A DNA stretch of 64,000 nucleotides, taken from IMG/VR virus record IMGVR_UViG_3300044632_001003, positions 62,001 through 126,000 of that record; one strand, 5' to 3'. Within the stretch, counting starts at the first letter, position 1, and each line of letters starts with the position of its first letter. Below are positions 2,541 to 6,727 of the stretch, piece after piece. Both the position numbers and the translations under genes were made by a program. The notes below the pieces were generated by a model. The model was not told where the DNA came from. It worked only from the letters and a program-made list of their open reading frames with translations, and ran no database searches.

Positions 2541-2599
2541 AGTATGGCACGAACCAGGGGGGACCGCAACCCCCCCTGTGCCACTTGTTCAACTGTCAC
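2541..2599 (-). promoter_or_regulatory. early promoter cassette
   Basis: GTGCCACT-N6-ACTGTCAC 2578-2599; -35 TTGCGG inside a G6/C6 hairpin, 17 bp, -10 CATACT. Confidence 0.8.
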
Positions 2600-2792
2600 C
2601 CAGGAGGTCTGGATCCAGCAGGTCGGGATAGTAAGACTCAACCTCTGAAATCAGTTCCTCATCAGTATAACTGGTGAGATTTTCTTCCATCTGGTCACCA
2701 ACAATCTGCAGCAAATCTTTGGTGCTCATGTTATCAAGCAAACGGTCGATGTATGCTTCAACCAGTGCTTCACGATCGAAAGTGTCAGTCAT
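2589..2792 (-). CDS. small acidic hypothetical protein
   Basis: 67-aa track ORF, D/E-rich. Confidence 0.75.
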   Translation of the reverse strand: MTDTFDREALVEAYIDRLLDNMSTKDLLQIVGDQMEENLTSYTDEELISEVESYYPDLLDPDLLGDS

Positions 2793-2796
2793 GGTT

Positions 2797-2994
2797 TCAG
2801 TTCAGAACGTGACGATAATCAATGGATTTGATGCACCAACCAGATGCACAAGTGATCTCTTCAACTAAATCATCTTCATCATCTGCCTCCCAGATTTGAC
2901 CAATGTATTCTGCATTTAGAAGGTCTTTGTCATAAGCAGTCATCTCATCATCGTCATCAGTATCAAACTCAATGTAGAGGATTTGGAACTGCAT
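2797..2994 (-). CDS. small acidic hypothetical protein
   Basis: 65-aa track ORF with DTDDDDE and EADDEDD runs. Confidence 0.75.
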   Translation of the reverse strand: MQFQILYIEFDTDDDDEMTAYDKDLLNAEYIGQIWEADDEDDLVEEITCASGWCIKSIDYRHVLN

Positions 2995-3119
2995 CAGTAA
3001 TCGTAGTTAGAGTTCAGATACTCATTGACATCGAACTTTTCATCTTTGAGTTCAGGAATGTCAAGGTCAAAGATCTCACCAGGAGCATCTTGAATCTCAG
3101 ACCAGAGTTCATCAAACAT
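2994..3119 (-). CDS. 41-aa acidic micro-protein (MFDELWSEIQDAPGEIFDLDIPELKDEKFDVNEYLNSNYDY)
   Basis: hand translation; directly behind promoter 3144-3202. Confidence 0.7.
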   Translation of the reverse strand: MFDELWSEIQDAPGEIFDLDIPELKDEKFDVNEYLNSNYDY

Positions 3120-3202: not shown

Positions 3203-3346
3203 ACTCACCTCTTTGATGTTAAGACCCATCAACTGGTTTGTGACACGATTGCAGACAACTTCGGTGGGGTTCTTTACTCTGGACTTCTCATACCAGAAGG
3301 TAACGCAACCATCGTAAGTTTCGACCCGAACTTTAACTTCAGTCAC
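3188..3346 (-). CDS. 52-aa hypothetical protein (GTG start, MTEVKVRVETYDG...)
   Basis: hand translation; behind promoter 3370-3427; stop codon inside the next palindrome. Confidence 0.6.
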   Translation of the reverse strand: MTEVKVRVETYDGCVTFWYEKSRVKNPTEVVCNRVTNQLMGLNIKEVSVTVE

Positions 3347-3369
3347 GGTTGAATCTCAGGAACGAATGT

Positions 3370-3427
3370 ATAATAACCCACGTGGTGGGGTTATGGTAAA
3401 ACTGTGTGCCACTTCACGAACTGGCAC
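3370..3427 (-). promoter_or_regulatory. early promoter cassette
   Basis: GTGCCACT-N6-ACTGGCAC 3406-3427; 30 bp to -10 TATTAT. Confidence 0.75.
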
Positions 3428-3429
3428 AA

Positions 3430-3815
3430 TTGCTCTTGATATCTGCCCTCTGGGTCTTTAAAGTACTTATACCCTACGGACATCGATACCAAAGGTATCT
3501 ATAAGAATTCATATTTCTAGATATCATTCTCAATAAGAAAGGTCTTATTGAGAATTATAATAAAGCACATTTAGATGGTGTGGGAAGGGGTGAGTGGGGT
3601 GAAGCACATATTCTTGCACATAAGGCGGGCTATGTGTGCCGCGTGGGTATCTAGAACTCACCAGCCGCGATTCTCAATAAGAAACTAGTTATTGAGAATG
3701 AGATCTAGATGTGTATGTGTGTATCTAGATGATGTATGATGTGTGCGTCTCGACGAGATATAATGAATGCGTGTGCGATCTAGTCGAGACCACACACGCA
3801 CGTCTCGACGAGATT
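3430..3815. repeat. non-coding repeat/hairpin block A
   Basis: inverted repeats ATTCTCAATAA..TTATTGAGAAT at 3526-3555 and 3670-3699; CTCGWCGAG-type motifs at 3749, 3780, 3804; several TCTAGA; no credible ORF. Confidence 0.75.
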
Positions 3816-4289
3816 CTACCAGTTCTTATTGAACACGAACCCATCTTCGAAATCAAAATCATAACGAAGATTACAGTTCCAGGTAGCATCCCAATCAACT
3901 ACCACGAACGAAGGTGCATCAAACCCATAGATGTCAGTGGTAAATTCTTCGGCAAATGCTGCCTCAGAATCATAAGGACCCTGATAGGCATCTTCGAAAG
4001 ACTGAAGATCCGCCTCATCATAGAGTTCCAGGAATGCATTCACAGCACCCTTACCATAAGAACTACACAGAGTCTGATACAGTTCCTGATACTCTTCGGA
4101 GATCTCATCCTCCAGAGTATCATTGTTCAGGATACCCTTGACAGTCAGCAACTCAGTGTAGAATTCAGTGTATTTGAGTTTGCCATCACGCTCATACCCA
4201 CAGGCACGAACGATTTCAGACATCTTAGCAGGCGGGTTTTGTGCCTGCATTTCATTCACTTTGTTCAGCAGGGAAGAACCAGTCAGCAT
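3816..4289 (-). CDS. fusion of cyanobacterial AbrB-like N-terminal domain and ArdA-like acidic C-terminal domain
   Basis: N-terminus MLTG..LLNKV..SEIVRACGY....YTEFYTELLTVKG; C-terminus YQGPYDSEAAFAEE...VDWDATW...DFEDGFVF. Confidence 0.6.
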   Translation of the reverse strand: MLTGSSLLNKVNEMQAQNPPAKMSEIVRACGYERDGKLKYTEFYTELLTVKGILNNDTLEDEISEEYQELYQTLCSSYGKGAVNAFLELYDEADLQSFEDAYQGPYDSEAAFAEEFTTDIYGFDAPSFVVVDWDATWNCNLRYDFDFEDGFVFNKNW

Positions 4290-4313: not shown

Positions 4314-4372
4314 AATGTAGATCGGATTGGTCAGGAACGCAAGGGGGTGTGTGCCACTTATCAGACTGGCAC
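4314..4372 (-). promoter_or_regulatory. early promoter cassette
   Basis: GTGCCACT-N6-ACTGGCAC 4351-4372; -35 TTGCGT, 17 bp, -10 TACATT. Confidence 0.8.
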
Positions 4373-4558
4373 AAGCCCCATCTCATCAATCATAATATCC
4401 CGCACACTTTCACGGTCGAAACTATCACCACAGAAATCAGCACCTGAATGAATGTATTTAAACGTTGCCTCAATGATATCATCATCAGTGGCACCCATAT
4501 CATAAATGCCACCAGGACCATAGAAGGACTTTACGTAACGAATGAATTCCACCATCAC
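4361..4558 (-). CDS. small acidic hypothetical protein
   Basis: 65-aa track ORF with GDSFDRESVRD motif; ends inside the palindrome. Confidence 0.75.
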   Translation of the reverse strand: MMVEFIRYVKSFYGPGGIYDMGATDDDIIEATFKYIHSGADFCGDSFDRESVRDIMIDEMGLVPV

Positions 4559-4782
4559 TTCACCTCCGCCAGCAGCAGTTTGTGAATGCGGTCTGCTTCC
4601 TCTAAGATATCACCATCCAGACGGTCCCACTCTACCCAATCATAGGCAGAAAGTGCAGTCTCATAAGAACCATCAGGCAGCAGGTTAGCATACATCAGAA
4701 CCCGCTGATTGTTTGCATCCAAAGTGTAAGTGCAATTGTTGAGTTTGGAGATGGCGAAAACCATTGGATTTCTCAGCGACAA
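4555..4782 (-). CDS. hypothetical protein
   Basis: 75-aa track ORF; ATGA overlap with the next gene. Confidence 0.7.
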   Translation of the reverse strand: MSLRNPMVFAISKLNNCTYTLDANNQRVLMYANLLPDGSYETALSAYDWVEWDRLDGDILEEADRIHKLLLAEVK

Positions 4783-4786
4783 ATGA

Positions 4787-4860
4787 ATATTACCCCACCA
4801 GAGGACCCAGTGGCCAGAGGACCCAGTGGGGAATCAGTGTGCCACTACCTCAACTGTCAC
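4787..4860 (-). promoter_or_regulatory. early promoter cassette with a 16-bp tandem duplication in the spacer
   Basis: GTGCCACT-N6-ACTGTCAC 4839-4860; CCAGAGGACCCAGTGG x2 at 4798-4829. Confidence 0.65.
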
Positions 4861-4996
4861 ATGCAACGAACTCTTGGAGATAGTAATCCAATGGCAGCTC
4901 AAGTTCAGCCGCTTTCTGTTCCCAAGCATCCCATTCTTCCTGGGAAGCATCATTCAGAAAATCTTCGAAAGTATAATCAAAAACTGGACCACACAT
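4850..4996 (-). CDS. 48-aa acidic protein ending KAAELELPLDYYLQEFV (paralog of 11367..11573)
   Basis: start moved to MCGPVF, downstream of promoter 5021-5079. Confidence 0.7.
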   Translation of the reverse strand: MCGPVFDYTFEDFLNDASQEEWDAWEQKAAELELPLDYYLQEFVACDS

Positions 4997-5020
4997 TGGA
5001 TTAATTGCGACGACGAAGGT

Positions 5021-5079
5021 AGAATATCCCACCTGGTGGCAGATATCAAGGGGTCTTGTGCCAGTTCTCAAACTGTCAC
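5021..5079 (-). promoter_or_regulatory. early promoter cassette
   Basis: GTGCCAGT-N6-ACTGTCAC 5058-5079; -35 TTGATA, 17 bp, -10 TATTCT. Confidence 0.8.
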
Positions 5080-5080
5080 A

Positions 5081-5191
5081 TTACTCGAACGGGTCGAATT
5101 CTTTTACCCTACAATGAACATCTTCGTTAGGTTCGAGTTGCAATAACTCCCGCCAATCGATGTTATCCAGGTCCAGATCATCATAACACAT
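5081..5191 (-). CDS. 36-aa acidic micro-protein (MCYDDLDLDNIDWRELLQLEPNEDVHCRVKEFDPFE)
   Basis: hand translation. Confidence 0.55.
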   Translation of the reverse strand: MCYDDLDLDNIDWRELLQLEPNEDVHCRVKEFDPFE

Positions 5192-5265
5192 GATATCTAG
5201 TGTAACCTGTACGATACGCTTCTGTGCTAACATGAGGTCTAGATGTGTATGTGTACTAGATTATA

Positions 5266-5418
5266 TCATGCATAATGACGATATGCAAGCGATTCGTAAT
5301 CTTGCCCATCTCGTGCATAATCCTCGTCGAGATCTAGTGCATCCTGTGCATAATACTCGTCGAGATCTTGTCCGTAATCGTTGCTGAATGTATAGTCGAG
5401 ATCGTAGTCGTCGTACAT
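5266..5418 (-). CDS. 50-aa Asp/Tyr-rich micro-protein (MYDDYDLDYTFSNDYGQDLDEYYAQDALDLDEDYARDGQDYESLAYRHYA)
   Basis: hand translation; first ORF downstream of the consensus promoter at 5570-5598. Confidence 0.65.
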   Translation of the reverse strand: MYDDYDLDYTFSNDYGQDLDEYYAQDALDLDEDYARDGQDYESLAYRHYA

Positions 5419-5893: not shown

Positions 5894-6727
5894 ATGGCAA
5901 GAGGCATCATTTATCTCATCATCAACAAGCAAACTGGTGAAAAATACGTCGGAAACACCACACTTGCAATGAATAAAGAATGGGCACACCAGATAGACCG
6001 TGCTAAAAGAATGTCCCGAGAACCCTTACACAAGGCATTCAGAGAACATGGTGTCCATAACTTTATGATTAGAGAGTTAGATGAATGCGATGAATTAGAG
6101 TTTAATGAGAAAACAAACTATTGGATAGAGCAATACAAACCTGAATACAATCCTGCCATTAGCGCCATAGAGATTGCTAAGAAGGCAATAGAAGAGTATA
6201 AACCTGCCGAAGGCAGGCCTGCCGAAGGCATAAGTGCCGAAGGCATAAGCGCAAGCGCCGCAAGCGCAGCACTACAAGAACTTGCTAAACCAAAACCAAA
6301 AGAAAAAAGAAAAGTTAATACCTCACACTTAATGCAATGGAATGAGAATACCCGTGGAGATGGTAAGAAGACAGGTCTTAAAATAAGATGCAAGAACTTA
6401 GAAACTGGTGTATGCACTGATTATGAATCAGCCAGAGAAGCAGCAACACAAGTGACAGGCAATCCGAATAACCGTGCAAACATTCTATCTGCTGCCAGGC
6501 ATTACCGCATTGCCTATGGTCATCGTTGGCAGATCTTAGAAGAAAAGGAAAAGAAAAAGGCGGTGTTTGGTGTCGATAAAAAAACGGAGATAATTGGTCC
6601 CCGTTGTGAAAGTATTAATGCTGCTGTTCATTTTTTTGAAGGCACCGATAAAAACGGAATTCTCAAGAGTCTGAAGAATCCAGGGCGTTATAGTTGGAAA
6701 GGTTATTACTGGTTCTATGTACGTTAA
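5894..6727 (+). CDS. GIY-YIG-fold protein with C-terminal NUMOD1-like DNA-binding modules; catalytic Arg and Glu appear replaced
   Basis: GIIY..KYVG N-terminus, NKEW instead of KRW, EKT instead of ERE, YN; two (K/R)xxTG...ES..(E/A)A modules. Confidence 0.7.
   Translation: MARGIIYLIINKQTGEKYVGNTTLAMNKEWAHQIDRAKRMSREPLHKAFREHGVHNFMIRELDECDELEFNEKTNYWIEQYKPEYNPAISAIEIAKKAIEEYKPAEGRPAEGISAEGISASAASAALQELAKPKPKEKRKVNTSHLMQWNENTRGDGKKTGLKIRCKNLETGVCTDYESAREAATQVTGNPNNRANILSAARHYRIAYGHRWQILEEKEKKKAVFGVDKKTEIIGPRCESINAAVHFFEGTDKNGILKSLKNPGRYSWKGYYWFYVR

What the first reader, a model, noticed from the sequence alone, without database searches (positions are those of the whole stretch)
3816..4289. 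AbrB-like N-terminal domain fused to an ArdA-like acidic DNA-mimic domain
Seen: the N-terminal ~55 aa match the helical N-terminus of cyanobacterial AbrB-like (cyAbrB) regulators (LTG..LL.KV...CGY......FY..LL..KG). The C-terminal ~60 aa resemble the ArdA C-terminal domain (Y.G.YDS..AFAEE...VDW.ATW....D..DGFVF) and are very acidic. Established: ArdA inhibits type I restriction by DNA mimicry, and cyAbrBs are global regulators of carbon/nitrogen metabolism. Inference: a chimeric anti-restriction protein, or a dominant-negative decoy that oligomerises with host cyAbrB.
Basis: partly seen in the sequence, partly recalled or inferred. Interest (0 to 1): 0.65.

Follow-up and report, generated by a model that had tools for sequence, protein, structure and literature searches.

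The report
Phage ArdA mimic with cyAbrB head
A lake cyanophage gene joins the N-terminal (non-DNA-binding) domain of the host's own cyAbrB global regulator to an acidic ArdA-type DNA-mimic domain, which suggests that the phage aims a DNA decoy at a host chromatin regulator as well as, or instead of, at restriction enzymes.

Summary
Window 3816-4289 (minus strand) is a real 157-aa gene of a 205-kb freshwater cyanomyovirus. It is conserved and under purifying selection.

Residues 1-54 are homologous to the N-terminal domain of cyanobacterial cyAbrB proteins. A profile of the phage domains hits 2-5 cyAbrB genes in each cyanobacterial genome tested, with E-values down to 8e-19. Identity to a Synechococcus cyAbrB is 47%. 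The "CGY" cysteine is kept. The AbrB DNA-binding domain is absent.

Residues 62-157 (net charge -19) correspond to ArdA domains 2 and 3. They match PDB entry 2W82 (solved ArdA structure) at Z 6.8 and rmsd 2.5 Å over 82 residues. They hit PHROG 36653 at 2.6e-13 and are 45% identical to the C-terminus of a bona fide ArdA. The Pfam ArdA match stays below its cut-off, and ArdA domain 1 has been replaced.

The cyAbrB-type head is a mobile cyanophage module. It also occurs alone (P-TIM68 gp074, 52 aa) and fused to unrelated tails. No phage searched carries a whole cyAbrB.

Function is inferred, not shown. My best reading is a DNA mimic tethered to a decoy of the cyAbrB oligomerisation domain. The rival reading is a plain anti-restriction protein. 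The complex prediction gave no verdict. I rate it a new variant of a known kind, interest 0.6.

The parts
3816..4289 (-). Whole gene, 157 codons plus stop (stop at 3816-3818)
   Evidence: ORF list and translation. There are 207 near relatives at 90% clustering and 20 IMG/VR loci. dN/dS is 0.08-0.46 against 9 orthologues. RNA-library contigs cover exactly 3816-4289.
4128..4289 (-). Residues 1-54: cyAbrB-type N-terminal domain (three helices with a short hairpin, net charge +1)
   Evidence: Searches show homology to host cyAbrB N-termini. The AF2 model has helices 4-15, 23-29 and 40-50. There is no Pfam or NCBIfam model for this part.
4194..4202 (-). Codons 30-32, the Cys-Gly-Tyr motif. It is invariant in the phage domains and matches the conserved single cysteine of cyAbrB.
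   Evidence: Alignments A2 and A4. The single conserved Cys of Synechocystis AbrB2 is glutathionylated and affects oligomerisation and DNA binding (PMC4264147).
4107..4127 (-). Residues 55-61: acidic, disordered linker
   Evidence: pLDDT is below 50 for residues 55-61. The linker region (residues 55-64 as counted) has net charge -4. Indels among relatives fall here.
3819..4106 (-). Residues 62-157: ArdA-like domains 2 and 3, net charge -19
   Evidence: PHROG 36653 'anti-restriction', E 2.6e-13, residues 62-153. Pfam ArdA is below threshold but in register, 66-143/155. VIA-align Z 6.8 to 2w82_A. The ESM Atlas neighbours include a cluster with ArdA in 37% of members.
3819..3998 (-). Residues 98-157: equivalent of ArdA domain 3, the best conserved stretch
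   Evidence: 45% identity to the C-terminus of a bona fide Pfam ArdA and 41% to a Streptomyces phage ArdA-like protein.

Best explanation
SHOWN: this is a conserved cyanomyovirus gene for a two-domain protein. The first domain is a neutral 54-residue copy of the N-terminal, non-DNA-binding domain of the host cyAbrB family. A disordered acidic linker joins it to a strongly acidic ArdA-type body (ArdA domains 2 and 3). The cyAbrB-type head stands where ArdA domain 1 normally sits. INFERRED: the acidic body acts as a DNA mimic that occupies DNA-binding proteins. The head makes the protein join host cyAbrB oligomers by imitating their own association domain. The fusion would then be a targeted decoy. 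It would cap or poison cyAbrB assemblies and hold a DNA mimic next to their AbrB DNA-binding domains. That would free the AT-rich incoming phage DNA (window GC 39.5%) and host genes from this nucleoid-associated repressor. It probably also keeps ArdA-type inhibition of type I restriction enzymes where the host has them.
For: Architecture: head; body; two confident domains and a floppy linker; charge. The head has a role of its own. It occurs as a 52-aa stand-alone protein in P-TIM68 (gp074), 3 kb from a separate ArdA-like gene without a head (gp061). It is also fused to a Kyano_Gp96-like domain and to other unrelated tails. No phage in 50,697 records has a complete cyAbrB; only the head was found. 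The head is at least as constrained as the body, with dN/dS 0.08-0.33 against 0.19-0.46. It keeps the residues that are invariant in host proteins, including the Cys whose glutathionylation changes AbrB2 oligomerisation and DNA binding. Target availability: cyAbrB was found in all 5 cyanobacterial genomes tested, at 2-5 copies, whereas HsdR passed its cut-off in 27 of 81 picocyanobacterial genomes. Published background: cyAbrB2 binds long low-GC tracts and silences them, cyAbrB1 and cyAbrB2 interact, and oligomerisation is expected (PMC11368403). Precedent on H-NS: the truncated H-NST and T7 gp5.5 attack its oligomerisation, the DNA mimics Ocr and Arn compete for its DNA-binding site, and ArdA ColIb-P9 is reported to relieve H-NS silencing (PMC6936261). 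Timing: in the T7-like cyanopodovirus S-CBP1 the full-length homologue is gene 5, in the leftmost block ahead of the RNA polymerase gene. By analogy with T7 I take this block to be early genes.
Against: No binding or activity data exist. The complex prediction for head against host head scored 0.13, below the mark of 0.32, so it gave no verdict. It has not been shown that the cyAbrB N-domain is the oligomerisation domain; this rests on the cysteine result and on analogy with Bacillus AbrB, whose domain order is reversed. The phage heads form their own group, separated from all host heads by one moderately supported branch (83/86). They are therefore not recent copies of a current host protein. 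Databases already label many relatives simply as 'antirestriction protein'. ArdA-like bodies with other N-termini occur in other cyanophages, so plain anti-restriction is sufficient to explain the body.
Confidence: 0.45

Rival explanations
1. It is a plain ArdA-type anti-restriction protein. The acidic body inhibits type I restriction-modification enzymes by DNA mimicry. The cyAbrB-type head only replaces ArdA domain 1 as a self-association or stabilising module, for example linking ArdA-type dimers end to end. It has no contact with host cyAbrB.
For: The body is ArdA-like by profile, pairwise and fold comparison. Its total length and register match ArdA, with Pfam positions 65-135 falling on residues 65-135. 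HsdR is present in a third of sampled picocyanobacteria. The S-CBP1 homologue sits in the leftmost gene block ahead of the RNA polymerase, where T7 has ocr. Databases annotate relatives as antirestriction proteins.
Against: This reading does not explain why the same head occurs alone and on unrelated tails in cyanophages. It does not explain why only the head of a host regulator, and never the whole, is found in phages. It does not explain why the head keeps host-invariant residues under stronger constraint than the mimic. ArdA-like bodies with other N-termini exist in other cyanophages.
Confidence: 0.35
2. The head is a sensor or adaptor rather than a decoy. It binds the same unknown ligand, partner or redox signal as the cyAbrB head (for example through the conserved cysteine). 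The DNA mimic would then be switched on or off with the host's redox or carbon/nitrogen state, or the head would titrate a cyAbrB cofactor.
For: The Cys-Gly-Tyr motif is invariant in the phage heads. The matching Cys is the glutathionylation site that changes AbrB2 activity. cyAbrB is also reported to be phosphorylated, and cyAbrB1's DNA affinity responds to pH and redox state.
Against: The stand-alone head of P-TIM68 has Thr in place of the Cys, so the cysteine is not essential to every phage version. No ligand or partner of the cyAbrB head other than cyAbrB itself is known.
Confidence: 0.12
3. The resemblances are chance or compositional, or the ORF is not a functional gene.
For: Pfam ArdA stays under its gathering score, at 15-18 bits against 27. 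Foldseek's ArdA hit is E 0.31.
Against: The profile E-value against host genomes is 8e-19. The PHROG hit is 2.6e-13. VIA-align gives Z 6.8, alone at the top. There is a transitive link to a 101-bit ArdA. dN/dS is well below 1 in both domains, and an in-frame 3-nt indel is seen in a relative. Hundreds of relatives exist.
Confidence: 0.02

Closest known systems
ArdA (Tn916 Orf18, PDB 2W82; Pfam PF07275)
   Same: The acidic body has the fold of ArdA domains 2 and 3 (Z 6.8, rmsd 2.5 Å, 82 residues). Domain 3 is 45% identical to a bona fide ArdA. The overall length and register are similar. It is carried by a mobile genetic element, and in a T7-like relative the homologue lies in the leftmost gene block ahead of the RNA polymerase.
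   Different: The Pfam score is below the gathering cut-off. ArdA domain 1 is absent and replaced by a helical domain of host-regulator type. Activity against type I enzymes is untested.
cyAbrB regulators of cyanobacteria (Sll0359/cyAbrB1, Sll0822/cyAbrB2, CalA)
   Same: The N-terminal 54 residues are homologous, at 47% identity to a Synechococcus paralogue. The shared residues include L2, G4, L7, the CGY motif and FY.
   Different: The protein lacks the C-terminal AbrB-like swapped-hairpin DNA-binding domain PF14250 that defines the family. It therefore cannot be a DNA-binding regulator of that kind. The loop after CGY is 5 residues shorter.
H-NST and T7 gp5.5 (antagonists of the H-NS oligomerisation domain)
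   Same: In concept, each is a mobile-element protein that consists of, or binds, the association domain of a host nucleoid silencer, without that silencer's DNA-binding domain (PMC6936261). The stand-alone phage head (P-TIM68 gp074) has exactly the H-NST layout.
   Different: The target family is unrelated (cyAbrB, not H-NS). Binding has not been shown. Here the decoy is also fused to a DNA mimic.
T7 Ocr and T4 Arn (DNA mimics that also release H-NS)
   Same: Each is an acidic DNA-mimic phage protein with anti-restriction and anti-silencer activity. ArdA ColIb-P9 is reported in the same class (reference 143 of PMC6936261).
   Different: The folds differ, and none of these proteins carries a domain copied from its target.
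Cyanophage homologues: S-CBP1 gp5, S-B28, DSL-LC07, WH11-B (full length); S-TIM5, S-TIM54, P-TIM68 gp061 (ArdA-like part matched); S-PM2 p068 (different N-terminus)
   Same: The ArdA-like body is the same in all. The podovirus proteins also have the cyAbrB-type head.
   Different: Identity is 30-48%. P-TIM68 gp061 and S-PM2 p068 carry other N-termini. For S-TIM5 and S-TIM54 only the ArdA-like part matched, and I did not read their N-termini. None of these records mentions cyAbrB, and several are annotated 'hypothetical'.

Membership tests
ArdA (PF07275) | Score at or above the curated Pfam gathering cut-off (27 bits) | tested here: not met
   15.2 bits for the whole protein and 18.1 bits for residues 60-157. 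9 of 13 relatives hit the family, all below the cut-off.
ArdA (PF07275) | Fold of ArdA domains 2 and 3 | tested here: met
   The AF2 model (pLDDT 88) matches 2w82_A 75-165 with Z 6.8, rmsd 2.5 Å and 82 aligned residues. It is the only Z >= 5 among 48,161 chains.
ArdA (PF07275) | ArdA N-terminal domain 1 | tested here: not met
   Residues 1-54 are a three-helix domain homologous to the cyAbrB head. The structural alignment to 2W82 starts at residue 73.
ArdA (PF07275) | Sequence kinship of the C-terminal domain with accepted members | tested here: met
   45% identity over residues 98-157, E 2e-12, with Pseudomonas phage 3MF5 gp04, which scores 101 bits on PF07275 over its full length.
ArdA (PF07275) | Strong net negative charge, consistent with DNA mimicry | tested here: met
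   Residues 62-157 have 22 D/E and 3 K/R, net -19.
ArdA (PF07275) | Dimerisation through domain 3 and inhibition of type I R-M enzymes | not testable with these tools
   Needs SEC-MALS and an EcoKI or cyanobacterial type I assay.
cyAbrB regulators | Cyanobacteria-specific N-terminal domain with the conserved Cys | tested here: met
   Profile E down to 8e-19 against cyAbrB genes. 47% identity. CGY is conserved.
cyAbrB regulators | C-terminal AbrB-like DNA-binding domain (PF14250) | tested here: not met
   No PF14250 hit at E <= 10 in the protein or anywhere in the 205-kb phage record. The five host proteins scanned score 98-120 bits.
Dominant-negative decoys of nucleoid proteins (H-NST type) | Carries the target's association domain but not its DNA-binding domain | tested here: inconclusive
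   The head without the AbrB domain is shown. That the head is the association domain is only inferred from the Cys/oligomerisation result.
Dominant-negative decoys of nucleoid proteins (H-NST type) | Physical binding to the host protein | tested here: inconclusive
   Complex prediction scored 0.13 against a mark of 0.32, giving no verdict.

The most novel reading that the evidence does not exclude
Cyanophages carry a family of captured cyAbrB 'heads'. These occur alone as 50-aa microproteins or fused to effector tails, and they dismantle the cyAbrB nucleoid-silencing system of their hosts. This ORF would be the most elaborate form: an oligomerisation-domain decoy and a DNA mimic in one chain. 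It would be the cyanobacterial counterpart of H-NST or gp5.5 combined with Ocr or Arn. It would also imply that cyAbrB acts as a xenogeneic silencer of AT-rich phage DNA.
Probability: 0.3. Interest if true: 0.8.

Novelty: new variant of a known kind. Interest (0 to 1): 0.6.

Why it matters
cyAbrB proteins are found in every cyanobacterium. At least one is essential, and they control carbon, nitrogen and hydrogen metabolism. The job of their N-terminal domain is still unknown. A phage protein that copies only that domain gives a natural probe for it. If the head binds cyAbrB, that would identify the association surface. It would also show that cyanophages attack a host chromatin regulator, and it would explain a set of small, unannotated cyanophage early genes. 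If instead the protein is only an ArdA variant, it still shows that ArdA domain 1 can be exchanged for another domain. It also widens the known anti-restriction repertoire of abundant freshwater and marine cyanophages.

Tried and rejected
- **Complex prediction**, phage head with host cyAbrB head: score 0.13, no verdict. It counts neither for nor against binding.
- **Foldseek against the PDB**: ArdA ranked first but at E 0.31, which is not significant on its own.
- **HMMER profiles against PDB sequences**: neither the body profile (A6) nor the head profile (A2) found ArdA or any other relative.
- **EF-hand reading of the head.** phmmer drew eukaryotic EF-hand repeat proteins (E 5e-7 and 2e-4) and calmodulin-like chains (E 0.02-1). 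I rejected membership because the loop lacks the first Asp ligand and its length varies among relatives, being 5 residues longer in cyAbrB.
- **Helix-turn-helix reading of the head.** The best Z was 4.4, among many unrelated three-helix domains. I take this as a common arrangement only.
- **Chance-level hits, dismissed**: Tet-like 2OG oxygenase, SpaK and VirB5.
- **Megablast of 3 kb against phage records**: no match.
- **The search for related loci with the head alignment**: I reached cyanobacterial genomes through the phage's psbA instead.
- **The protein-atlas search on the head**: no usable hit.
- **Tree of heads.** Phage and host heads separate on one branch (83/86), but the tree is unrooted and has only 61 columns, so no donor or direction can be named.
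- **Single-sequence search of 1.8 billion representatives.** It found 24 clusters, mostly phage-type, and no cyAbrB below E 1e-3. The kinship showed only with a profile on whole genomes and in pairwise comparison.
- **RNA-library contigs** cover the gene. Because DNA can be present in such libraries, I do not count this as proof of transcription.

Full report
**1. What is there.**
Window 3816-4289 holds one open frame on the minus strand, with ATG at 4289 and a length of 157 aa. The window is bases 62001-126000 of a 205-kb virus record that is 96% complete. The record carries psbA and psbD. Its psbA is most like those of Cyanobium and freshwater Synechococcus. The stretch is held by 14 lake or freshwater DNA runs from 2016 to 2024. 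It is therefore a freshwater T4-like cyanomyovirus.

The gene lies in a run of small minus-strand ORFs. All of them belong to phage families of unknown function. Window GC is 39.5%.

**2. Is it a real gene?**
The word search found 207 clusters of near relatives, mostly 157-159 aa. IMG/VR holds 20 loci at 69-100% identity. Against nine orthologues, dN/dS is 0.08-0.33 in the head and 0.19-0.46 in the body.

Contigs from lake metatranscriptome libraries of three studies lie on the gene. One of them (X15) matches from exactly 3816 to exactly 4289, carries an in-frame 3-nt insertion, and then continues into unlike sequence. The gene therefore moves as a cassette. DNA can be present in RNA libraries, so I do not count this as proof of transcription.

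**3. The head (residues 1-54).**
No Pfam, NCBIfam or PDB sequence match exists for this part. A single-sequence search of 1.8 billion representatives found 24 clusters. Most have the same head on an ArdA-like tail, and a few have it on other tails.

I could not draw relatives for a virus record. I therefore reached cyanobacterial genomes through the phage's psbA and searched five of them with a profile of 18 heads. Every genome had 2-5 hits:
- E 8e-19 to 2e-15 for the best hits in picocyanobacteria;
- E 1e-10 to 1e-5 in Synechocystis and Nostoc.

The hits are the N-termini of ORFs of about 120-145 aa from their start codons. The five that I scanned have PF14250 AbrB-like C-termini at 98-120 bits, and all eleven extracted ORFs show the same C-terminal domain in the alignment. 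These are the cyAbrB proteins. Pairwise identity is 47% over 58 residues, E 2e-11. In the joint alignment L2, G4, L7, G-Y and F44 are invariant, and the Cys before G-Y is nearly so.

According to a review of the Synechocystis work, that single conserved cysteine of AbrB2 is glutathionylated. The modification changes oligomerisation, DNA binding and repression (PMC4264147).

The phage record has no PF14250 domain anywhere. So the phage has the head of cyAbrB without the AbrB fold.

**4. The body (residues 62-157).**
- PHROG 36653 'anti-restriction protein': E 2.6e-13.
- Pfam ArdA matches in register but below its cut-off. 9 of 13 relatives do the same.
- The AlphaFold2 model is confident (mean pLDDT 88). 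It has two domains and a disordered linker at residues 55-61.
- Foldseek ranks ArdA 2W82 first, but weakly.
- The exhaustive VIA-align search gives 2W82 Z 6.8, rmsd 2.5 Å, 82 residues, model 73-156 on chain 75-165. This is the only Z above 5.
- Residues 98-157 are 45% identical to the C-terminus of Pseudomonas phage 3MF5 gp04, which is a full-length Pfam ArdA at 101 bits.
- ESM Atlas neighbours are all viral, and one cluster carries ArdA in 37% of members.
- The body has net charge -19 and the head +1.

The cyAbrB-type head occupies the sequence position of ArdA domain 1.

**5. The head is a mobile phage module.**
- Full-length homologues occur in T7-like cyanopodoviruses. S-CBP1 gp5 lies in the leftmost gene block ahead of the RNA polymerase.
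- Other cyanophages match only over the ArdA-like body (S-TIM5, S-TIM54, P-TIM68 gp061). Where I read the N-terminus (P-TIM68 gp061, S-PM2 p068), it is a different one.
- P-TIM68 also encodes a 52-aa stand-alone head, gp074, 3 kb from its ArdA-like gene.
- Phage B23 gp246 and several metagenome proteins carry the head on unrelated tails. One tail resembles Kyano_Gp96.
- A whole cyAbrB searched against 50,697 phage records found only heads.
- In a tree, phage heads and host heads fall on opposite sides of one branch (83/86). The tree is unrooted and short, so no donor can be named.

**6. Mechanism.**
The architecture is shown. The function is inferred.

Published work describes cyAbrB2 as a nucleoid-associated protein. 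It covers long low-GC tracts and represses them, it interacts with cyAbrB1, and it is expected to oligomerise (PMC11368403). For H-NS, mobile elements use two counter-measures (PMC6936261):
- truncated or binding proteins aimed at the oligomerisation domain (H-NST, T7 gp5.5);
- DNA mimics (Ocr, Arn, and ArdA ColIb-P9 by the paper cited there).

The present protein would combine both against cyAbrB. This reading explains why the head occurs alone and on several tails, and why it is so conserved. It also fits a target that every host cell has, whereas HsdR passed its cut-off in only 27 of 81 picocyanobacterial genomes sampled.

The simpler rival is an ArdA variant whose head only serves self-assembly. 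That rival fits the body, the gene position and the database labels. The complex prediction gave no verdict.

My odds: targeted decoy with or without anti-restriction 0.45, plain anti-restriction 0.35, sensor or adaptor head 0.12, artefact 0.02.

**7. Novelty.**
Relatives are already labelled 'antirestriction protein' in several records, so the body is not new. I found no paper that links cyanophage proteins with the cyAbrB head. No Pfam or NCBIfam model covers the head, and PF14250 starts only at its last helix. I rate the finding a new variant of a known kind.

**8. House rules.**
Only table 11 was used. The large representative search was used once, because the family scans left the head unexplained.

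Noticed in passing
window 3347-3815: A 470-bp non-coding gap lies downstream of the gene. It holds two copies of a 30-nt palindrome (3526-3555 and 3670-3699), each beside TCTAGA, and nested hairpins at 3747-3814 directly after the stop codon. No Rfam family matches. RNA-library contigs lie at 3314-3464 and 3572-3720.
   Followed up: partly
window 3816-4289 against runs X15 and X18: RNA-library contigs from other lakes match the window exactly between the gene's two ends and then run on into unlike sequence. This indicates gene-sized mosaicism between related phages.
   Followed up: partly
L099 4369-4527 (Prochlorococcus phage P-TIM68 gp074): A stand-alone 52-aa cyAbrB-type head annotated as hypothetical. 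It has Thr in place of the conserved Cys. The same phage has a separate ArdA-like gene without a head (gp061) 3 kb away.
   Followed up: partly
proteins P0136, P0139, P0141, P0142, P0145; L100 1411-1839 (phage B23 gp246): The same head is fused to unrelated tails: a Kyano_Gp96-like domain (P0136), unknown domains, and in P0145 the C-terminal half of diaminopimelate epimerase. The last may be a chimeric assembly.
   Followed up: partly
window 4170-4208 (residues 28-40): The loop 'GYERDGKLKYTEF' and its flanking helices resemble an EF-hand closely enough to draw eukaryotic EF-hand repeat proteins (E 5e-7) and calmodulins. The first Asp ligand is missing and the loop length varies among relatives.
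   Followed up: partly
L101 763-1179 and rows: Picocyanobacteria hold 4-5 cyAbrB-type genes per genome. One is a divergent third type of 138 aa, with a weaker head match (E about 1e-7) and an AbrB-like C-terminal sequence by eye (not scanned against Pfam).
   Followed up: no
window 5894-6727 (+): A 277-aa homing endonuclease of GIY-YIG/HNH type is the only plus-strand gene among the minus-strand small ORFs near the finding.
   Followed up: no
window 2589-3119 and 4361-5418 (-): The neighbours are a string of very small, mostly acidic ORFs (41-75 aa). Most belong to PHROG families of unknown function. This is typical of a hyperplastic early region and may hold further host-takeover proteins.
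   Followed up: no
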